Assembly: GCF_001194135.2 (NCBI RefSeq)
Contig: NC_068987.1
Span: 6,907,703-6,971,702, forward strand
Source of the DNA: Octopus bimaculoides
Lineage: Eukaryota
Length of the DNA: 64,000 nt
Direction: 5' to 3'
The notes beneath the pieces are model-generated. The model was not told the DNA's origin. It was given only the letters and a program-made list of their open reading frames with translations, and did no database searches. Made by a program: the position numbers and the translations under genes. Below, one piece after another: positions 24,276-63,024 of the stretch (position 1 is the first letter of the stretch; each line of letters opens with the position of its first letter).

Positions 24276-24939
24276 AGGCATAATTACACACAATCCGACC
24301 GTGAAACGCCTAAGTGTTGGAAAAACAACGAAAAAATGATTTTTTAAAAATCTACCCCAGTACTTCACTGGTACTTTATTTTAACGACTTCAGAATGACG
24401 AGAGATAAAATAAGAGTTCCAAGAACACATACTCAATGTCTGTAGAGACCCCAATATACGTAAATAAATTAAAAGGTCGCCGAGAAGTATGCGCAACGAG
24501 ATGAAACAGAAGAATCCATTGTGAAAGCAAAACAAAGAAAAGCAGAAACCAAATCGAACGAAATTTCAGAGCAGCTTAATAGCAACAAGAAAAGAGAGAA
24601 AACAAGTCTCGAGGCAAAATCAGGTAAAAACTAAACATTAAATATCAACAAATAATATATGAGAATCTTCAAAAGCTCTTCAGAAACAATGTTAGGAAAT
24701 TTTACTAATAGCTGAGCCATGAGAATTAACATCAAGGGAATGATTTAGCAAATACTGAAGTATTTGTTATGTCATTCGATCAAATATTTGGAGCAAAGAG
24801 ATTCAATACACTAGTGAGTTGAACTGGTTATGGAAGTTTAAAATTGAAATGGCCTAACGATAAAATGTTTACAAATATACCAAATATAGTAAAAGTTCCT
24901 CAATCCTATGTTGTTTCGTTAGTGAACAGAACTGTTGAA

Positions 24940-25345
24940 AACTCTATCTTCTGCCCATTTCAGTCTCTTCTGCTTATGAACATCCTTCAGAGGGGGGGGG
25001 GGGCTTGTAACAAGTTTAACATTCCTGGCTACCTGCTTCAAGAGGCGACACCTGGTAGTTTTGGATACCTCCTCCCTGCCACAATGTTTGAAGATTTCTC
25101 TACTTGTCAGATATGGGTTCTGCACAACTCTCCTTTTCACCCATGATAAAATACGATTCGAAGCAACCCTCGAATGGCCCTTATCTGCCCTCGATCGGAC
25201 AAAAATAGGAGACTGCAAAAATTTCTTCATTGTTCGGTGATTCCTTACCAGTATTTTGGATACTTCTATGGTTGTTTTTCCTCTTCCAAGCTTTGACACA
25301 ATGGTAGACTTCTCATTTGAAGTAAGATCACATTTCTGATCCTTA
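24940..25345 (-). mobile_element. Tc1/mariner transposase N-terminal (HTH) remnant
   Basis: DLTSNEKSTIVSKLGRGKTTIEVSKILVRNHRTMKKF...SKTTRCRLL...PPPLKDVHKQKRLKWA is a characteristic Tc1 paired-like and homeo-like region. It is truncated before the DDE domain. Confidence 0.85.
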
Positions 25346-29425: not shown

Positions 29426-30612
29426 TTGTTGCTTTTTTTTTTCGTACATTCTCCCTTATATATATATATATATATNNNNNNNNNNNNNNNNNNNNNNNNN
29501 NNNNNNNNNNNNNNNNNNNNNNNNNNNNNNNNNNNNNNNNNNNNNNNNNNNNNNNNNNNNNNNNNNNNNNNNNNNNNNNNNNNNNNNNNNNNNNNNNNNN
29601 NNNNNNNNNNNNNNNNNNNNNNNNATACGTGTGTGTGTATGTGTGTGCGTGCCTTTCTTTATGTTCACTGCTTTGCTCGAAAAAAAGTGTTACTTAATTC
29701 TAAATATTACACAATGCAGCGGTTGGTTTTCTTTAAATCTGACGGTTTCAAAAACACATTTCATCCTTGGATGTGTGGGTTTTGTGATGTGCCCTGGAGG
29801 TGTTCCGGCGGTTACAGAAAGAGAATGACTATCCATATTCAATACTTTAGAAATACCAGATAATAGTACTTACTATCAACTGTATTTTTGAATTTTAAAA
29901 TTTTAATTCTTTTTCTTTAAAAACATTTAAACACGCACAGAGAGACACAGACACACACAGACACACACAGACACACACAGACACACACAGACCCACACAT
30001 ACTCCCACACCAGTGATCTATTTACTATTCAAGTCCGGTACAAAATCCTAGGTGCCTGCCACTGTATTAATAATAACATTCACGATGCGTACGTCTTTGT
30101 TCGATAATGAACTCATTAACCCAAATTGTTGATATGCACTCCCAATTTATTTCGCTCCAGTAGCTTCCGGACTTGAAGGTTGCAATGCATGTACCTATCT
30201 GCGACATAGAATTTGCTATACAAGAATGGTAAAAATGATGCAATCTGTTAAGTGGGAAGAAGGAATCTATTACATTTGGTAGTCCAGTCTCTATCGATTC
30301 CTTTAACTCTGACTTTCGATATATTAACTTTGTCAAGCTGAAATAAGAAACGAAATATATCCATTAATGAAAGAGATGGCATAAAAATAATTAGTTTGAT
30401 TGATATATATAGAGAGAAACAAAGAAAATCGTGTGTCGGTGAGTGTGTGTTTTTGTGTTTATGTCAATGCAATCTATTAAAAACTTCATCGTTAATACTT
30501 CATTATGTAATCTAAACTCTAACGAAATTACGCTTTCAATCACATTAAACGAATTCTTGTGACAATGAATTTCATTTTTATTCTGTATTGTTATGTGTGT
30601 TGTAACTTATAT

Positions 30613-34197: not shown

Positions 34198-34322
34198 ATT
34201 ACGTCGAAAAGGAGAGATGTTTTTCCATAGCCGCTTTGTGATTTTAACCGTTGTTATTTTGTGCGTTCTTGACTGCGCCTTGGTCCTGGGAGAACTTATT
34301 TTGGACTTGCACAGTGTTAGAG
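34198..34322 (+). CDS. HVCN1: Hv channel exon encoding S0-S1: LRRKGEMFFHSRFVILTVVILCVLDCALVLGELILDLHSVR
   Basis: Acceptor atttcag| and donor G|gtaagt. The translation aligns by eye to human Hv1 S1 ([24 protein letters not shown]). The D112 equivalent is GAC at 34271-34273, and the E119 and D123 equivalents are at the right spacing. Confidence 0.95.
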
Positions 34323-37092: not shown

Positions 37093-38424
37093 TGTGTGTG
37101 TGATAACGTAACAAGTCAAATGGAAATTTTCATTTCAACGGCAAATACTGATGCCAATTTCACCAACAATTGCACTTAACCATGCACACAAAAATGCACA
37201 TTTTGGCAAGCAAATATTATTTATATTTGTCTCTATGTGTGTAGTCGTATGAATATAAAAATCACCACAGGAAAACACAAGCAGACGTTCTCTCACTCTC
37301 TCGCGCTCTCACTATCTCACTCTCTCACATGAACAGGCGCTCACACCCACATATAGGCCTCTATATATGTGTAGATACACACGCACATACGTTCACATGC
37401 CCTACACACATATACACACATATGAATATAAATGTACATATGCAAGCATATATATATATAATTCAATACCCATATATATGCATGTATTGTGTATGTGTAT
37501 GAATACATACATACATATANNNNNNNNNNNNNNNNNNNNNNNNNNNNNNNNNNNNNNNNNNNNNNNNNNNNNNNNNNNNNNNNNNNNNNNNNNNNNNNNN
37601 NNNNNNNNNNNNNNNNNNNNNNNATAGCCGCCCCCTCTCTCTCTTCCTATATATATATATATAATGACAAATGCATTGATATAATTTTCAGATATCTGAA
37701 AATTGGTTTTGCCAGCGCAATTGCGAAATATTTTTCTCATACCCGTAGCAATTTTGAAATATACGTAAATGATAACTTTAAGTTTCCAAGTCATATTTGT
37801 ACTTACGAAACGAATAGCCGTATTATATATTTGAAATTGCTTTTAAAATATTTTGTACTTATGCAGCTCACTCTAAAGAGCTACGCTGAGAAAATAATTT
37901 TGTTTCTATTCGAGAAAGCAGTTAAACTTGGCCAAGTATTCTTAAGTTTAGGGTATCTTTTTCTCGAGCTCTATAGTTTCTCCGTGCAAATGTCTAGGAA
38001 TTGGATGCACATACATACGTACATCAACACTTTAGCATAAAGTTCCGTCAAGTTTATGACATCACACTTGGAATTCTGCAACCATACAATCCAAGAACAT
38101 GACATCCCCACCAAGTACCTGAATCATAAAAAGTAGAAAACGGGTGACAGAGAACGTAGGCTGTAAAGGCACAATATTACCAACTGTGAAAGAATGTCTT
38201 ATCCTAGAATATTTTATCCTATTTTAAAATTATATATATATATATATATGTAGCAATGTAGACGATTCAGTGAAGTAAAGATCCTTCAATGCAGTACTGA
38301 TTCTATGCGAAATAATGGAATTTCTGTTAGATTATTTGTGGAAAATAATGTTTGTTGCCTGAAATTCATTAAAGTAATGTAGTGAATACTATTTTGAGGA
38401 CGACTGCAAGTGTAGTGATATTGC

Positions 38425-41745: not shown

Positions 41746-42068
41746 ACACGCTGCAAGAAACAGAAAAACTTAGTGATTCATTTATAAATAAACTCAGGAA
41801 CAAATACCCCACAGACATGGAAGGCATGCAGGAGCACTTGATCTATGTTTATGAAAAAGTTCTAGACTCCGTAATGACGTGGCCCAAGAATAGCTCGGTG
41901 CCCAACACAACCCGTCCAACCCGCTCGCGACGTGCAGCCGACGTCGACCCTATAATGGAAAAGTGGAATGTTCATGTGCGGTTACCCGGCTCTCATACGC
42001 TCGAGGAAGAGATAGGGCACGCCTTCCATTTGGCCAGTATCTCCATACTTGCAGTCTTAGTCGCTGGT
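41746..42068 (+). CDS. HVCN1: Hv channel exon encoding the long S1-S2 loop and most of S2: DTLQETEK...NSSVPNTTRPTRSRRAAD...EEEIGHAFHLASISILAVLVAG
   Basis: Acceptor atttcag| in phase 1 matches the previous exon. The 323 nt are open. FHLASISIL matches Hv1 S2 FHYMSITIL. The donor GGT|gtaaat is the only choice in phase with the next exon. Confidence 0.9.
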
Positions 42069-42371
42069 GTAAATATGCACTTTTATTTTTCCATTATTCA
42101 TTATATTTTAAGAAAAAAAAAATGGTAACCGATAAAATGCACTTCACATAAATAACCAACAATTGTGTAAACAAAATATATCCGAGAATTTATATTCATA
42201 TGTGGAATGTGTGTGTGATGGTTTGCGTGTACGTATATATGTATATATACTTTCATTGTTTAATTGGCAGGTAGTTATAAAAGTGAGCGAAGCCTCGAGA
42301 GTGTCTGACATGGCGTTTATCGTCAATCTCTAATTACATATACACACACACACACAAACACGCAGGTACGT

Positions 42372-43746: not shown

Positions 43747-44229
43747 TCTTATATATATANNNNNNNNNNNNNNNNNNNNNNNNNNNNNNNNNNNNNNNNN
43801 NNNNNNNNNNNNNNNNNNNNNNNNNNNNNNNNNNNNNNNNNNNNNNNNNNNNNNNNNNNNNNNNNNNNNNNNNNNNNNNNNNNNNNNNNNNNNNNNNNNN
43901 NNNNNNNNNNNNNNNNNNNNNNNNNNNNNNNNNNNNNNNNNNNNNNNNNNNNNNNNNNNNNNNNNNNNNNNNNNTTGAGTAAACGTAAGCAACGTTTTGA
44001 ACCATGAAGAATTTGTACCGAATTCTAGCAGAGTTGTGAATTTGTTTTAACATTTTTTTGAAATTGTCTAATAATACAGACATGGTTGTGTGTGCCTTTT
44101 GCACTACTATTCTCATGGTTGTATGTTTTATAGTGCTTCAATTTTATTAGATCAGATGTCTCACACAAGCAAGTCTGACCTGTCAGATTTTACAACACAT
44201 TTGCCATTTTTTTTATGTCGTTAAAAGTA

Positions 44230-44430: not shown

Positions 44431-44949
44431 ACGTAACTTGCAATCCATTATGTTAGAAAATTATATATATCCTGATGATTGATAATCTTTATATGTGTAA
44501 TCGCCTGCCAGGATTTGTGTTCAATAATTAAAATTAGTGTGAATCTTCGTTTATTTTTCTATAACATGTACGTACCCTGTTAACTGATGCGTGACATATA
44601 TATTAAGTTGTAATAAGATATCACAGCGTGCTTTCCGTTCTCCCTCTTACATCTTTGTTTCAATCATGCCATTGCTATGCACACATTGTTAGTATCAGTA
44701 TTTCAGCTGACATACTTTTTATGGTATTTCTTATTTTCCATAGCATTTTTATTAAAAATTCAACCTGAAATTGCTTGCATATATGTAAAAAACATACCGA
44801 ACATTTGTCTGGCATAAAGAGGTGTGCTACGAATAGTGTTTGTGCAACAGAAATATAGATATTAACAATGATTTATCTACTTTCCCATTTTTTTGTCTGT
44901 GCTTTACTGTTTTTAAGCATTCTATATTTGGCTTTACATATATTTACAG

Positions 44950-45003
44950 ACGTTATTAAAAATGATATGTTTCGGCACAAGATTTTTTAAAGGAAAATTG
45001 GAG
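44950..45003 (+). CDS. HVCN1: Hv channel exon, end of S2 and S2-S3 linker: TLLKMICFGTRFFKGKLE
   Basis: Acceptor tttacag|ACG and donor GAG|gtaagt; 54 nt, phase 0-0. It matches Hv1 IIFKLFVFRLEFFHHKFE, with K157 and E171 equivalents retained. Confidence 0.93.
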
Positions 45004-46867: not shown

Positions 46868-47006
46868 GTATTTGATGCCGCTATCCTGATAGTTTCCTTC
46901 ATTGTAGATCTTATATTCGTAAATGGCCTTCCAAGATATAAGATAGAGGAGTTTGTCTTCATTCTAGCCTTCCTGTTACCCTGGAGAGTTATTCGTGTAG
47001 TGAACA
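46868..47006 (+). CDS. HVCN1: Hv channel exon encoding S3-S4: VFDAAILIVSFIVDLIFVNGLPRYKIEEFVFILAFLLPWRVIRVVN
   Basis: Acceptor ttctgcag| and donor A|gtaagt. The D174 and D185 equivalents are present, and the Hv S4 signature W-R-x-x-R-x-x-N is present. Confidence 0.96.
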
Positions 47007-47266: not shown

Positions 47267-47382
47267 GTCTTGTAGTAGCTGTCAAAGATCACGAACACTT
47301 TCGCCTCAAACTAGTGTACAGTCGTAAAAAGAAAATTTTAGCCGTATTAAAACAAAAAGAATTAAAATTAGATTTATTCCAA
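47267..47382 (+). CDS. HVCN1: Hv channel exon, post-S4 and coiled coil: SLVVAVKDHEHFRLKLVYSRKKKILAVLKQKELKLDLFQ
   Basis: Acceptor tttttcag| in phase 1 (A+GT=Ser) and donor CAA|gtaagt. The frame is open and has a basic, heptad-like composition similar to the Hv C-terminal coiled coil. Confidence 0.92.
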
Positions 47383-47919
47383 GTAAGTTGATAAATGTTA
47401 ACTTCCTTTAAATGGCGCAGTTCACTCCCAATCCTGTATTTCGGCATATATATATATATANNNNNNNNNNNNNNNNNNNNNNNNNNNNNNNNNNNNNNNN
47501 NNNNNNNNNNNNNNNNNNNNNNNNNNNNNNNNNNNNNNNNNNNNNNNNNNNNNNNNNNNNNNNNNNNNNNNNNNNNNNNNNNNNNNNNNNNNNNNNNNNN
47601 NNNNNNNNNNNNNNNNNNNNNNNNNNNNNNNNNNNNNNNNNNNNNNNNNNNNNNNNNNNNNNNNNNNNNNNNNNNNNNNNNNNNNNNNNNNNNNNNNNNN
47701 NNNNNNNNNNNNNNNNNNNNNNNNNNNNNNNNNNNNNNNNNNNNNNNNNNNNNNNNNNNNNNNNNNNNNNNNNNNNNNNNNNNNNNNNNNNNNNNNNNNN
47801 NNNNNNNNNNNNNNNNNNNNNNNNNNNNNNNNNNNNNNNNNNNNNNNNNNNNNNNNNNNNNNNNNNNNNNNNNNNNNNNNNNNNNNNNNNNNNNNNNNNN
47901 NNNNNNNNNNNNNNNNNNN

Positions 47920-47974
<55 letters not shown>

Positions 47975-49004
47975 TATATATTTATATATGTATATCTATA
48001 TATAAATGTGTGTGAGAGTGTATATAGGTGTGTGTGTAAGTACGTGTGCGTATCACTGTGTTTGTGTGTTTGCATGTGTGAGTTAAACAGAGGTAGCACA
48101 TATGATGAATTGGTTAAGTGGTTGAAACATTTGAGAAAATATTGAAGACGCGGCAGTTTATGTACTGGTATGCGATGCTACTGTCACAAGTGCCTTGCAT
48201 TAGACTACCTTAGAGGTATTTGGAGATTAGAGATAACTTCAATGAATTTATTTGGATAATATTGGTAACAAGTCAGGAAATTGTGAGGAGGAAAAATCCT
48301 CTTAATGTTGTGGTACTTCTGCAATTTTTTGAAATGCAAGCTAATGCAACTGAATTATTTTACCAACCACGGAATTGGCTATGAACCAGAATAGGTTTTT
48401 GGTAAGTATATATATATATAAATCAGTTTTTAGCGTCCGTGTGTATCATTTAGAGAAAGAATTAAAGAGAACACTACACTGCACCAAACACATTACATTG
48501 CACCTAATACATCTAAATAAACGAAGAGTGTGCTGACAAGGCGCCAACTCCATGAAATTAATAAAATTAGGTAGGTGTGAACGAAAGTAAAAACTTCGAA
48601 ATTTCTTGCGATTATAACTCTAAATAAAAGGAATTTGTGAAACTGTATGCAATATGCAAGTTGCCCTATTGCTTAAGGACTTTTCTGCTAAGGTCATATT
48701 TTCCTCAGCGAAGTATCTTATTGTTCTTAGGAACGCAAGATTATTCTTGCGATTTCTATTCGTCTGCTTCTTTATCTGAATTTTCAAAAATGCTCGTATG
48801 TTATAAAAATATAAGTTGTACCAACAAAAAGTGCATTTGAAATCAAAACCATAATAGAGGCAATTAAAAGATGATGAATTTCTTTANNNNNNNNNNNNNN
48901 NNNNNNNNNNNNNNNNNNNNNNNNNNNNNNNNNNNNNNNNNNNNNNNNNNNNNNNNNNNNNNNNNNNNNNNNNNNNNNNNNNNNNNNNNNNNNATGTGTG
49001 TGTG

Positions 49005-49739: not shown

Positions 49740-49830
49740 ACTCAAATTGATAGTTTACGAAAATTATGTGTATCACATGGAATAACTGACAGTCAAATTA
49801 ACCAGTGCCTCTATCAAGAAGAACCAAAAG
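49740..49830 (+). CDS. HVCN1: Hv channel exon, distal coiled coil: TQIDSLRKLCVSHGITDSQINQCLYQEEPK
   Basis: Long pyrimidine tract ending ttttag|ACT and donor AAAG|gtaggt. Phase 0 matches the previous exon. LRKLCVSHGI resembles the Hv1 end LNKLLRQHGL. Confidence 0.85.
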
Positions 49831-50030: not shown

Positions 50031-50078
50031 AATATGGGAATATAATTTGCGCAGTGGTCAGCCGGCGAAGGTTATCGG
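50031..50078 (+). CDS. Candidate symmetric phase 1-1 Hv exon: EYGNIICAVVSRRRLS(G); an alternative longer acceptor at 49941 is in the same frame
   Basis: Pyrimidine-rich acceptor ...tcttattcctgctgctcag| and strong donor CGG|gtaagt. The frame continues from EEPK without a stop. There is no homology support that I can see. Confidence 0.35.
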
Positions 50079-54070: not shown

Positions 54071-54270
54071 CCTTTCAGGCTGTCTGCATATATATANNNN
54101 NNNNNNNNNNNNNNNNNNNNNNNNNNNNNNNNNNNNNNNNNNNNNNNNNNNNNNNNNNNNNNNNNNNNNNNNNNNNNNNNNNNNNNNNNNNNNNNNNNNN
54201 NNNNNNNNNNNNNNNNNNNNNNNNNNNNNNNNNNNNNNNNNNNNNNNNNNNNNNNNNNNNNNNNNNNNNN

Positions 54271-55005: not shown

Positions 55006-55129
55006 NNNNNNNNNNNNNNNNNNNNNNNNNNNNNNNNNNNNNNNNNNNNNNNNNNNNNNNNNNNNNNNNNNNNNNNNNNNNNNNNNNNNNNNNNNNNNNN
55101 NNNNNNNNNNNNNNNNNNNNNNNNNNNNN

Positions 55130-61585: not shown

Positions 61586-63024
61586 NNNNNNNNNNNNNNN
61601 NNNNNNNNNNNNNNNNNNNNNNNNNNNNNNNNNNNNNNNNNNNNNNNNNNNNNNNNNNNNNNNNNNNNNNNNNNNNNNNNNNNNNNNNNNNNNNNNNNNN
61701 NNNNNNNNNNNNNNNNNNNNNNNNNNNNNNNNNNNNNNNNNNNNNNNNNNNNNNNNNNNNNNNNNNNNNNNNNNNNNNNNNNNNNNNNNNNNNNNNNNNN
61801 NNNNNNNNNNNNNNNNNNNNNNNNNNNNNNNNNNNNNNNNNNNNNNNNNNNNNNNNNNNNNNNNNNNNNNNNNNNNNNNNNNNNNNNNNNNNNNNNNNNN
61901 NNNNNNNNNNNNNNNNNNNNNNNNNNNNNNNNNNNNNNNNNNNNNNNNNNNNNNNNNNNNNNNNNNNNNNNNNNNNNNNNNNNNNNNNNNNNNNNNNNNN
62001 NNNNNNNNNNNNNNNNNNNNNNNNNNNNNNNNNNNNNNNNNNNNNNNNNNNNNNNNNNNNNNNNNNNNNNNNNNNNNNNNNNNNNNNNNNNNNNNNNNNN
62101 NNNNNNNNNNNNNNNNNNNNNNNNNNNNNNNNNNNNNNNNNNNNNNNNNNNNNNNNNNNNNNNNNNNNNNNNNNNNNNNNNNNNNNNNNNNNNNNNNNNN
62201 NNNNNNNNNNNNNNNNNNNNGTATGTATAAGTAATGTTTATCGCCACCTTAAGGAACTAGGTGGCTAGTTATGTATTTATACACACACACACACTCCACT
62301 TTTACCCGCTCCCATTGATTGCACCTAGTATAGCACTAGCGTAGCAATAATTGGGTACCCTCCCAGCAGTATACTGGATAGATACTATCCCTTAGTGGGT
62401 TGTACCCCCAACCCCTAACTCTCTCACGTTATATATATATATATATATATATAAATATATATATATATACATAAAAATGACATATATATATATATATATG
62501 TCTATATGTGTGTATATAATATACATAGTATATATGCTATATATATAGTCATATACAATGCATACATACATCATACATACAGACATCTATATACATGTAT
62601 ATATATCATATATCGTATATATATCAGATATAAGTCACAGAATTCACAAGACTAGACATCAATGTCTAAGCGTAATCAAAGCCTAATGAAGTTTACTATG
62701 GAGAAAAAAACCCCCAACAAATACGACAACGCAGAATAATCGAAGTCATTTGAACTGCGCGATGTAAATCGAAGAATTGGGTATTCTGCAAGAATGAATA
62801 TGAAGAGCTATAGCAAACATGATGCAAGTTATCGAATGAGATCAATTTTTGAAATAATGAAATTTACGATATAATTGCAGGTGGTAACGATTGAAAATTT
62901 GAGGAGAAAAGAATTAAACTTTCTCCATAATTAACGTATCATTAAGAGGTTTGACTGTTTTTCTGTAGAAATGAGGAAATGTTTAATCACAATTCTACTT
63001 CGAAAGGCATCTTCAGCAAACGTA

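What the first reader, a model, noticed from the sequence alone, without database searches (positions are those of the whole stretch)
42057..42074. S2 has lost both the conserved countercharge (E153 to Gly) and the gating-charge-transfer Phe (F150 to Leu)
Seen: a gapless alignment of FHLASISILAVLVAG|TLLK with human FHYMSITILVFFMME|IIFK puts Leu (TTA, 42057-42059) at F150 and Gly (GGT, 42066-42068) at E153, while K157, D174 and D185 are kept. The Gly codon is the last of the exon. Only GGT|gtaaat is in phase with the next exon. The competing G|gtgtaa donor 2 nt upstream would frameshift. GGT differs from GAG or GAA at two positions, so a single base-call error is unlikely, and A-to-I editing cannot restore Glu. 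Established: F150 and E153 belong to the hydrophobic gasket and inner charge network of voltage-sensing domains. Inference: together with the R1 loss, this sensor is degenerate at three key positions. It could be a near voltage-independent proton pore, or a lineage-specific relaxed or pseudogenising allele.
Basis: partly seen in the sequence, partly recalled or inferred. Interest (0 to 1): 0.75.

Follow-up and report, generated by a model that had tools for sequence, protein, structure and literature searches.

The report
Octopus HV3-type proton channel, Gly at E153
The codons are real: this octopus gene for an unusual ("HV3-type") proton channel carries Leu and Gly where human Hv1 has Phe150 and Glu153. 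The Leu is a trait of the whole channel family. The Gly is an old, conserved octopod substitution, not a sequencing error or a decaying gene.

Summary
The window is Octopus bimaculoides gene LOC106869300, which encodes a molluscan HV3-type (LPWRxxR) proton-channel homologue. TTA 42057-59 and GGT 42066-68 align without gaps to human F150 and E153. K157, D174, D185, the selectivity Asp, R2 and R3 are kept.

The interpretation needs splitting.
- **F150 to aliphatic:** this holds across the family. None of 134 HV3-type proteins has Phe there, against 22 of 22 conventional HVs. The characterised Aplysia AcHV3 has Leu.
- **R1 loss:** this is the published family signature.
- **E153 to Gly:** this is specific to octopods within a well-supported orthologue group, where 21 of 22 other members have Glu. 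It is not an allele, an error or decay. O. sinensis, O. vulgaris, Argonauta hians, a third Octopus-like genome and spliced transcripts of another cephalopod (codon GGC) all have Gly. Synonymous sites are saturated while pN/pS is 0.04-0.11.
- **Loss of this acid recurs in HV3-type channels:** 26 of 134 against 0 of 22. This includes Gly in the Biomphalaria AcHV3 orthologue and Gln in Biomphalaria's orthologue of this gene.

The likely function is inferred, not tested: a weakly voltage-dependent, open-biased proton conductance like AcHV3. This is a lineage-specific variant of a known family, of modest interest.

The parts
42057..42059 (+). TTA, Leu208 of XP_014770462.1, at the human F150 position (S2, hydrophobic gasket / charge-transfer Phe)
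   Evidence: This column is never Phe in 134 HV3-type proteins. The codon is CTG in the other cephalopod's mRNA.
42066..42068 (+). GGT, Gly211, at the human E153 position (inner S2 countercharge). It is the last codon of the exon.
   Evidence: Gly is present in all octopod sequences found. The codon is GGC in L005 mRNA. 21 of 22 non-cephalopod orthologues have Glu.
42069..42074 (+). Splice donor gtaaat (phase 0) used by all NCBI isoforms. The competing donor gt at 42067-68 lies 2 nt upstream.
   Evidence: The donor is identical in a related octopus genome. The old model P0160 uses the upstream donor with acceptor 44917|44918.
41746..42068 (+). Exon encoding the S1-S2 extracellular loop (about 85 aa) and the outer and middle part of S2 (residues 103-211)
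   Evidence: Identity to the related genome is 95.7%, against 81-86% in the flanking introns.
44950..45003 (+). Exon encoding inner S2 and the S2-S3 linker (TLLKMICFGTRFFKGKLE). K215 (human K157) is at 44959-61. The exon holds the octopod-specific M216, F219 and K225.
44918..44949 (+). Intron sequence that the old gene model includes as coding (AFYIWLYIYLQ) through the alternative acceptor ttaag|CATTC
   Evidence: It is absent from all NCBI isoforms and from cephalopod transcripts.
34198..34322 (+). Exon encoding S1. The selectivity-filter Asp87 (human D112) is GAC at 34271-73. E94 and D98 correspond to human E119 and D123. C84 sits at the human V109 gasket position.
46868..47006 (+). Exon encoding S3 and S4. 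D232 is at 46874-76 and D243 at 46907-09. The LPWRVIR motif spans 46976-46996, with L266 at the R1 position, P267, W268, R269 (R2) and R272 (R3). N275 is at 47003-05.
47267..47382 (+). Exon encoding the post-S4 helix (SLVVAVKDHEHFRLKLVYSRKKK...), the start of the C-terminal long helix
49740..49830 (+). Exon encoding the continuation of the C-terminal helix (TQIDSLRKLCVSHGITDSQINQCLYQEEPK)
50031..50078 (+). Alternative 48-nt cassette exon (EYGNIICAVVSRRRLS). It is present in isoform X1 and skipped in X3.
13444..13565 (+). N-terminal cytoplasmic exon (ALVAETLILAKTHGYADKIENELEEELRRDSKGPPKEISAR), the motif shared by the orthologue subfamily
   Evidence: The first exon(s) and the last exon are not in the window.

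Best explanation
**Shown.** The window carries most of Octopus bimaculoides LOC106869300. It encodes a four-helix voltage-sensor-only protein of the molluscan 'unconventional' HV3-type proton-channel family.
- Kept features: the S1 selectivity Asp (D87), E94, D98, K215, D232, D243, W268, R2, R3 and N275, plus a long post-S4 helix.
- Family traits: Leu-Pro in place of R1-x, a long S1-S2 loop, and an aliphatic residue at the F150 position.
- Gly211 at the E153 position is a fixed substitution, shared by every octopod sequence found.
- Gly211 sits in an orthologue subfamily that otherwise keeps Glu.
- The gene is under strong purifying selection.
- Gly211 is accompanied by other octopod-specific changes at the inner end of S2, in the S2-S3 linker and in S3: A216M, A219F, H225K and V236L.

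**Inferred.** The protein most likely works like AcHV3, as a proton-selective conductance with very shallow voltage dependence and substantial open probability at rest. In Hv1, E153 is an internal countercharge that stabilises the resting (S4-down) state. Replacing it with Gly should bias the sensor further towards the activated or open state. Residues 211, 215 and 219 lie four apart, so on one helical face. The bulky changes at 216 and 219 may therefore repack the space left by the Glu. With R1 already gone, the constraint on this countercharge appears relaxed across the family, which would explain its repeated loss.
For: - **Identity.** The spliced model is 100% identical to XP_014770462.1. 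phmmer hits to Hv1 structures: 5oqk E=8.7e-11, 3wkv E=4.6e-9.
- **Family traits.** 0 of 134 HV3-type proteins have Phe at F150, against 22 of 22 conventional HVs. AcHV3 (P0018) reads ...SILLIE|VTMK with LPWR. The AcHV3 phenotype is a proton-selective leak with about 60 mV per e-fold (PMC10911540).
- **Gly is fixed.** O. sinensis, O. vulgaris, Argonauta hians, 12 transcript variants of another cephalopod, and a third genome all have it.
- **Codon turnover.** GGT/GGC and TTA/CTG. pS is 0.77 and pN 0.085; TM-core pN is 0.034.
- **Orthology.** The NJ clade of 23 has bootstrap 191/200, with Glu in 20 of 20 non-cephalopods. In the wider alignment it is 21 of 22.
- **Recurrent loss.** 26 of 134 against 0 of 22, Fisher p=0.026. 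This includes Gly in the Biomphalaria AcHV3 orthologue and Gln in the Biomphalaria orthologue of this gene.
- **Role of E153.** E153A and E153C shift gH-V by about -55 mV in hHv1, and internal acids stabilise the closed state (PMC4969798).
- **Structure.** The AF2 model has S2 as an unbroken helix 189-219 through G211, with pLDDT about 90.
Against: - No electrophysiology exists for this subfamily. The gene is not the one-to-one orthologue of AcHV3, so carrying over the AcHV3 phenotype is an extrapolation.
- The exact equivalent mutation in Ciona Hv1 (E201G) gave no current (PMC4969798 Table 4).
- Neutralising the equivalent acids in Shaker had little effect on G-V (same review), so the size and even the sign of the effect in an R1-less sensor is uncertain.
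- Pfam Ion_trans does not reach E<=0.01 for the octopus protein.
- Foldseek on the whole model gave no significant PDB match.
- I saw no O. bimaculoides cDNA directly. The junction rests on NCBI models, conservation, and transcripts of a related species.
- Squid, cuttlefish and Nautilus orthologues were not found, so the age of the change is bounded only from one side.
Confidence: 0.6

Rival explanations
1. The octopod protein no longer conducts protons. With R1, the Phe and the inner Glu all gone, it may be a non-conducting voltage-sensor-like membrane protein. It could be a regulatory or scaffolding subunit, perhaps pairing through its coiled coil with another HV, and kept under selection for that role.
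For: CiHv1 E201G, the same substitution, gave no detectable current (PMC4969798 Table 4). The review notes that some molluscan HV-derived sequences may no longer be proton channels (PMC10377628). Strong purifying selection fits any conserved function.
Against: Every residue tied to permeation is kept and is invariant or nearly so across the family: D87 (selectivity Asp), R269, R272, W268, N275, D232 and D243. AcHV3, which already lacks R1 and the Phe, conducts protons (PMC10911540). hHv1 E153A, E153N and E153C all conduct (PMC4969798).
Confidence: 0.2
2. The Gly is functionally near-neutral. In an R1-less HV3 sensor the E153 countercharge has little left to do. Its replacement in octopods is then drift at a weakly constrained site that became fixed, with no change in gating.
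For: The acid is lost in 26 of 134 HV3-type proteins, replaced by many different residues (L, I, F, V, M, A, Y, W, Q, T, G), but in 0 of 22 conventional HVs. Neutralising the equivalent Shaker acids had little effect on G-V (PMC4969798).
Against: Within the octopus orthologue subfamily the position is otherwise nearly invariant (21 of 22 Glu). Gly has been retained through saturated synonymous divergence. It co-occurs with several other octopod-specific changes in the inner half of S2, the S2-S3 linker and S3. This looks like a coordinated remodelling rather than a lone drift event.
Confidence: 0.15
3. Artefact or decay: a base-call or assembly error, a mis-annotated splice junction that hides a Glu codon, or a pseudogenising allele.
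For: The assembly has 12 N-gaps in this window, one of them in the intron just downstream (43760-43974). A second donor lies 2 nt upstream. An older gene model used a different junction. A 2-nt slipped GT-AC intron would read GAG.
Against: The same GCT GGT gtaaat is in an independent genome. Gly is present in four further species, including spliced mRNA that reads GCT GGC ACA. No alternative canonical junction yields Glu. The window has no duplicate S2 exon. pN/pS is 0.04-0.11 and the reading frame is intact. The exon is more conserved than its introns.
Confidence: 0.03

Closest known systems
Aplysia californica AcHV3 (LOC101855857; Chaves et al. 2022, FEBS J, PMC10911540)
   Same: Both have the LPWRVIRVVN S4 motif with no R1 and a Pro before the Trp. 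Both have Leu at the F150 position, a long S1-S2 loop, the S1 selectivity Asp, D174, D185 and K157, and a post-S4 helix or coiled coil.
   Different: AcHV3 keeps Glu at E153 (LLIE|VTMK). It is 980 aa, with a 299-aa loop and a 535-aa C-terminus, against 436 aa here. It lies outside the octopus gene's orthologue clade (bootstrap 191/200) and is only about 35-45% identical. The octopus subfamily has its own N-terminal motif (LVAETL.LAKTHGY..KIE.ELEEEL) and has not been characterised.
Human and mouse Hv1 (HVCN1; PDB 5OQK, 3WKV)
   Same: Both are voltage-sensor-only four-helix proteins with an Asp selectivity filter, WRxxR, N214, D174, D185, K157 and H140. S2-S4 aligns without gaps, E=8.7e-11.
   Different: Hv1 has R1, F150, E153 and a short S1-S2 loop. 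The octopus protein has L266, L208, G211 and an approximately 85-aa loop. H167/H168 of the linker are K225/G226 here.
Orthologues in gastropods and bivalves (e.g. Haliotis rubra LOC124270375, Littorina saxatilis, Mytilus edulis, Crassostrea virginica LOC111109086)
   Same: These sit in the same well-supported subfamily, at 41-55% identity. They share the N-terminal motif, the intron after the E153 codon, LPWR, and an aliphatic residue at F150 (I, L or V).
   Different: They have Glu at E153 (ETLLK), with Ala at 216 and 219 and His at 225. Octopods have Gly, Met, Phe and Lys at those positions. Biomphalaria is the one other exception, with Gln.
Gating charge transfer centre of voltage sensors (Phe plus two acids; Shaker F290, E293, D316)
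   Same: The third member (D232 = D174 = Shaker D316) and the S2 Lys one turn below are present.
   Different: Two of the three defining residues are replaced: Phe to Leu and Glu to Gly. The hydrophobic ring is kept in aliphatic form (C84, L208, I235, L236).

Membership tests
Voltage-gated proton channel (HV) superfamily | Significant sequence homology to Hv1 across S1-S4 | tested here: met
   phmmer against PDB: 5oqk_A human Hv1 E=8.7e-11 and 3wkv_A mouse Hv1 chimera E=4.6e-9. S1 and S2-S4 are both aligned.
Voltage-gated proton channel (HV) superfamily | Four transmembrane helices (S1-S4) and no pore domain (S5-S6) | tested here: met
   AF2 helices 74-123, 189-219, 227-252 and 255-326, with pLDDT 85-95. 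There is no further TM-like helix and the C-terminus is disordered. Foldseek on the whole model was uninformative.
Voltage-gated proton channel (HV) superfamily | Asp (or Glu) selectivity filter in mid-S1 (human D112) | tested here: met
   D87 is in VLDCALVLGE and is invariant across the 67 aligned family members.
Voltage-gated proton channel (HV) superfamily | S4 signature RxWRxxR | tested here: not met
   S4 reads LPWRVIR. R1 is Leu266, while W, R2 and R3 are present. This is the known HV3 deviation.
Voltage-gated proton channel (HV) superfamily | C-terminal coiled coil after S4 | tested here: inconclusive
   AF2 predicts one continuous helix 255-326, and the segment is highly conserved. No coiled-coil predictor or dimer model was run.
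Voltage-gated proton channel (HV) superfamily | Proton-selective, voltage- and delta-pH-dependent conductance | not testable with these tools
   This needs heterologous expression and patch-clamp.
Molluscan unconventional HV3-type channels (Chaves 2022; review PMC10377628) | xPWRxxR voltage-sensor motif (no R1, Pro before Trp) | tested here: met
   FLLPWRVIRVVN is identical to the AcHV3 motif.
Molluscan unconventional HV3-type channels (Chaves 2022; review PMC10377628) | Large extracellular S1-S2 loop | tested here: met
   About 85 residues lie between S1 and S2 (residues about 104-188), encoded in exon 41746-42068. Human Hv1 has about 10.
Molluscan unconventional HV3-type channels (Chaves 2022; review PMC10377628) | Large intracellular domains | tested here: inconclusive
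   The N-terminus is about 70 aa and the post-coiled-coil tail about 100 aa. Both are much smaller than in AcHV3 (535-aa C-terminus), but the review says the lengths vary hugely.
Molluscan unconventional HV3-type channels (Chaves 2022; review PMC10377628) | One-to-one orthology with AcHV3 | tested here: not met
   In the NJ tree the octopus gene falls in a 23-member clade (191/200) that excludes AcHV3.
Canonical gating charge transfer centre | Aromatic Phe in S2 (F150/F290) | tested here: not met
   Leu208. S2 has no aromatic residue between F197 at its outer end and F219 at its inner end. 0 of 134 HV3-type proteins have Phe here.
Canonical gating charge transfer centre | Acidic residue one turn below the Phe in S2 (E153/E293) | tested here: not met
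   Gly211.
Canonical gating charge transfer centre | Acidic residue in S3 (D174/D316) | tested here: met
   D232 is invariant.

The most novel reading that the evidence does not exclude
In HV3-type channels, loss of R1 has freed the inner S2 countercharge from constraint. It has then been lost many times independently. In octopods the Glu-to-Gly change was fixed together with compensating bulky substitutions in the inner half of S2 (A216M, A219F). The result would be a constitutively open, essentially voltage-independent proton leak channel. Glu-to-Gly needs a second-position A-to-G change (GAR to GGR), which is also the classic outcome of A-to-I recoding. The octopod Gly could therefore be a genomically hard-wired version of an ancestral coleoid editing site. 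In that case squid or cuttlefish orthologues would carry GAR or GAY at this codon and be edited.
Probability: 0.15. Interest if true: 0.55.

Novelty: new member of a known kind. Interest (0 to 1): 0.3.

Why it matters
HV3-type channels are the only native Hv relatives known to leak protons and to gate with almost no voltage dependence. Why they do so is unresolved. Chaves et al. discuss R1 loss, the Pro, and a possible 'breach of the hydrophobic gasket'.

This analysis adds two family-level facts that are easy to test.
- The charge-transfer Phe is replaced by an aliphatic residue in every HV3-type protein sampled.
- The inner Glu is dispensable in about a fifth of them, but in none of the conventional HVs sampled.

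The octopod protein is a natural E153G variant in an otherwise intact, selected channel. Its close Glu-bearing orthologues from abalone, mussel and oyster are available as controls. That makes it a convenient natural experiment on what the inner countercharge does once R1 is absent. It does not point to a new kind of protein.

Tried and rejected
- **First homologue search.** The search with the 213-aa core found no cephalopods. Only the exhaustive phmmer run and a profile search recovered them.
- **P0009.** I first suspected it was a squid orthologue. It is a bivalve protein, 65% identical to a Mytilus protein.
- **Foldseek.** The full AF2 model against PDB gave no match with E<=0.001. It returned a mix of coiled coils and weak voltage-sensor hits such as CatSper, Nav VSD4 and SLC9C1. 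I relied on sequence instead.
- **Pfam.** Ion_trans does not reach E<=0.01 on the octopus protein.
- **Naming the sequencing runs.** A literature search for SRR11869391, SRR29271455 and SRR34486193 failed. Two of the supporting cephalopod data sets therefore remain unnamed.
- **Mutually exclusive exon.** I looked for a second S2 exon encoding Glu. There is none in the window.
- **dN/dS.** A proper ratio could not be computed because synonymous sites are saturated (pS at or above 0.75). pN/pS is reported instead.
- **Supplements.** The supplementary alignments of Chaves et al., which include octopus, are not held.
- **Squid, cuttlefish and Nautilus.** No orthologue turned up in any search. 50%-identity clustering and candidate caps mean this is not evidence of absence.

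Full report
**1. What is in the sequence**

Positions 42024-42068 read TTC CAT TTG GCC AGT ATC TCC ATA CTT GCA GTC TTA GTC GCT GGT, followed by gtaaat.

tblastn with human Hv1 and with molluscan homologues, plus splice-site reading, gives these exons on the + strand:
- 13444-13565
- 34198-34322 (S1)
- 41746-42068 (S1-S2 loop and most of S2)
- 44950-45003 (inner S2 and linker)
- 46868-47006 (S3-S4)
- 47267-47382
- 49740-49830
- an alternative cassette at 50031-50078

The spliced product is 100% identical over 282 residues to a 436-aa database protein. That protein is XP_014770462.1, 'uncharacterized protein LOC106869300 isoform X1', from Octopus bimaculoides assembly GCA_001194135.2. The gene spans about 115 kb. 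Its first and last exons lie outside the window.

**2. The alignment**

phmmer against PDB sequences aligns S2-S4 to human Hv1 (5oqk_A, E=8.7e-11) without a gap between H140 and D174.

In XP_014770462.1 numbering, with the human residue in brackets:
- H198 (H140)
- L208 (F150)
- G211 (E153)
- K215 (K157)
- D232 (D174)
- D243 (D185)
- L266 (R205, R1)
- P267
- W268 (W207)
- R269 (R208, R2)
- R272 (R211, R3)
- N275 (N214)
- D87 (D112)
- E94 (E119)
- D98 (D123)

**3. Splicing**

Several lines support GGT|gtaaat joined to tttacag|ACG.
- The junction is in phase.
- All four NCBI isoforms of O. bimaculoides and every O. sinensis and O. vulgaris isoform retrieved use it.
- The intron sits after the E153 codon in other molluscs as well. 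Several gene models read through ...E|V into the intron, and one Pinctada model skips exactly the 54-nt exon.

Paired with ttaag|CATTC (exon start 44918) it is in frame and inserts AFYIWLYIYLQ. An older gene model (P0160) predicts this. That product also lacks Glu, would put 10 extra residues into S2, and appears in no transcript I could see.

Only a non-canonical GT...AC intron slipped by 2 nt would read GAG. There is no second copy of the S2 exon in the window.

**4. Not an error, not an allele, not decay**

Evidence from other sequences:
- A related octopus genome assembled independently from public reads (L002-L004) has GTT GCT GGT gtaaatatg. The Gly codon and the donor are the same, and the codon before GCT carries a synonymous change.
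- In that comparison the exon is 95.7% identical and the flanking introns 81-86%. All six amino-acid differences fall in the S1-S2 loop.
- A profile search recovered O. vulgaris, further O. sinensis isoforms and Argonauta hians.
- It also recovered full-length transcript contigs from an unidentified cephalopod (SRR29271455/62/63).
- All of these read LAVLVAGT[LI]LK.
- All 12 transcript variants of that unidentified species have Gly.

The unidentified species' mRNA reads GCT GGC ACA across the junction, and its Leu208 codon is CTG rather than TTA. Both residues have therefore been kept while their codons turned over.

Comparison with O. bimaculoides:

| Region | pS | pN | pN/pS |
|---|---|---|---|
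| Overall | 0.77 (saturated) | 0.085 | 0.11 |
| Transmembrane (TM) core | 0.79 (saturated) | 0.034 | 0.04 |
| S1-S2 loop | 0.85 (saturated) | 0.216 | 0.25 |

This is a gene under strong purifying selection. The 'relaxed or pseudogenising allele' option is refuted.

**5. Which family, and which of the three losses are special**

S4 reads FLLPWRVIRVVN, the LPWRxxR motif that defines the unconventional HV3 channels of molluscs (PMC10911540; PMC10377628). AcHV3 itself (P0018) reads HYASVAVVSILLIE|VTMK. It has Leu at F150 and Glu at E153.

I aligned all retrieved homologues and collapsed them at 95% identity (raw counts).

| Class | Sequences | F150 column | E153 column non-acidic |
|---|---|---|---|
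| xPWR (HV3-type) | 134 | L 102, I 14, M 14, V 3, E 1; never Phe | 26 |
| [RK]xWR (conventional) | 22 | Phe in 22 | 0 |

The difference in the E153 column gives Fisher p=0.026. 'Loss' of the charge-transfer Phe is therefore a family trait coupled to the LPWR sensor, and so is R1 loss.

The substitution is also conservative in the relevant sense. The gasket positions here are C84, L208, I235 and L236, all hydrophobic. In hHv1 even F150A alone gives no closed-state leak (PMC6754559).

The Glu is a different case. A neighbour-joining tree on S1 plus S2-to-coiled-coil columns gives the following.
- The three octopod representatives group together (200/200).
- They sit inside a 23-member orthologue subfamily (191/200) of gastropod and bivalve proteins.
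- That subfamily shares the LVAETL.LAKTHGY..KIE.ELEEEL N-terminal motif.
- All 20 non-cephalopod members have Glu.
- AcHV3 is outside this clade.

A wider alignment gives 21 of 22 with Glu. The exception is Biomphalaria, with Gln, seen in three independent models from two species.

Elsewhere in the family the acid has been replaced by L, I, F, V, M, A, Y, W, Q or T in at least ten sequence groups. In the Biomphalaria orthologue of AcHV3 it is again Gly, in two independent models.

**6. Context of the Gly**

Twenty-seven positions carry an octopod-specific residue where the other orthologues are at least 85% conserved. Five of them lie in the inner half of S2, the S2-S3 linker and S3: E211G, A216M, A219F, H225K and V236L, the last at the V178 gasket position. 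Residues 211, 215 and 219 are spaced i, i+4, i+8, so they lie on one helical face.

The AlphaFold2 model (mean pLDDT 72, TM blocks 87-94) predicts S2 as an unbroken helix 189-219 through G211. It also predicts a continuous S4-to-C-terminal helix 255-326.

I infer, but cannot show, that the large-to-tiny change at 211 and the small-to-bulky changes at 216 and 219 belong to one repacking of the inner vestibule.

**7. Mechanism**

Established:
- AcHV3 conducts protons selectively. It has a large resting leak and changes about 60 mV per e-fold, against 4-6 mV for AcHV1 and AcHV2 (PMC10911540).
- In Hv1 the internal acids E153 and D174 preferentially stabilise the closed state. E153A and E153C shift activation by about -55 mV (PMC4969798).

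Inferred: the octopod channel keeps everything needed for permeation (D87, R269, R272, W268, N275, D232, D243). It has an even less restrained sensor than AcHV3, so it probably behaves as a weakly voltage-dependent, open-biased proton conductance.

Against this:
- CiHv1 E201G, the same change, gave no current.
- Neutralising the equivalent Shaker acids had little effect (PMC4969798).
- The subfamily has never been recorded.

Hence the two live rivals are a non-conducting protein (0.2) and a functionally neutral change (0.15). Artefact or decay is effectively excluded (0.03).

**8. Novelty**

The family, its R1 and Pro anomaly, and the existence of octopus members are published (PMC10911540, PMC10377628). 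Neither paper mentions F150 or E153.

The following appear to be new but incremental observations within a known family:
- the family-wide aliphatic F150 position;
- the recurrent loss of the inner Glu;
- the fixed octopod Gly.

I rate this a new member of a known kind, with interest about 0.3.

**9. Limits**

- No squid, cuttlefish or Nautilus orthologue was recovered. The change is dated only to before the split between Octopus, Argonauta and the unidentified cephalopod.
- Two supporting data sets are unnamed sequencing runs.
- I did not see O. bimaculoides cDNA directly.

Noticed in passing
window 44950-45003 and 46868-46890 (residues 216, 219, 225, 236): Octopods share further lineage-specific residues at sites conserved in 20-21 of 22 other orthologues, A216M, A219F, H225K and V236L. 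H225K removes the linker His aligned with human H167, next to the pHi-sensing H168. V236L is at the V178 gasket position. They cluster around G211.
   Followed up: partly
P0227/P0247 and P0226/P0259/P0263 (Biomphalaria glabrata and B. pfeifferi proteins): Biomphalaria has lost the same Glu twice. Its AcHV3 orthologue has Gly (LLIG|V) and its orthologue of the octopus gene has Gln (LVIQ|TLLK). The latter also has Glu instead of Asp at the S1 selectivity-filter position (VTECAL).
   Followed up: partly
L005-L007 and proteins P0217, P0249-P0258 (unidentified cephalopod transcripts): Transcript variants differ by N/D (AHINDLED vs AHIDDLED) and K/R (TRLKAF vs TRLRAF). Both are A-to-G type changes, as expected of coleoid A-to-I recoding, although SNPs are not excluded.
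   Followed up: no
window 50031-50078; also residues 17-21 of XP_014770462.1 (exon outside the window): There are two alternative splicing events. One is a 48-nt cassette (EYGNIICAVVSRRRLS), present in X1 and absent in X3, and also present in O. sinensis. The other is a 5-aa VSAIR insert, present or absent both in Octopus (X1 vs X2) and in the unidentified cephalopod (P0217 vs P0216), so it is conserved.
   Followed up: partly
window 42066|44918 (protein P0160): An older gene model joins the upstream donor to an upstream acceptor and inserts AFYIWLYIYLQ into S2. That acceptor has the better polypyrimidine tract but an AAG rather than a CAG. No transcript evidence for it was seen.
   Followed up: partly
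window 34262-34264 (Cys84): The S1 gasket position (human V109) is Cys in octopus. It is Asn in many other HV3-type proteins (consensus LNI.DC) and Thr in AcHV3. A polar residue here might be the 'breach in the hydrophobic gasket' that Chaves et al. suspected.
   Followed up: no
window 24919-25299 (- strand): This is a 126-aa ORF resembling the N-terminal HTH of a Tc1/mariner-type transposase. It hits Pfam HTH_Tnp_Tc3_2 at E=7.7e-5 and 23.3 bits, below the 31.5-bit cut-off. It is probably a transposon remnant in an intron.
   Followed up: partly
window 71-318, 1809-1875, 4667-4848, 5521-5728, 29476-29624, 37520-37623, 43760-43974, 47461-47919, 48887-48993, 54097-54270, 55006-55129, 61586-62220: There are twelve runs of N (assembly gaps). 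Several of those inspected are flanked by TA/CA microsatellites. Two lie in introns next to the S2 and post-S4 exons. None touches coding sequence.
   Followed up: yes
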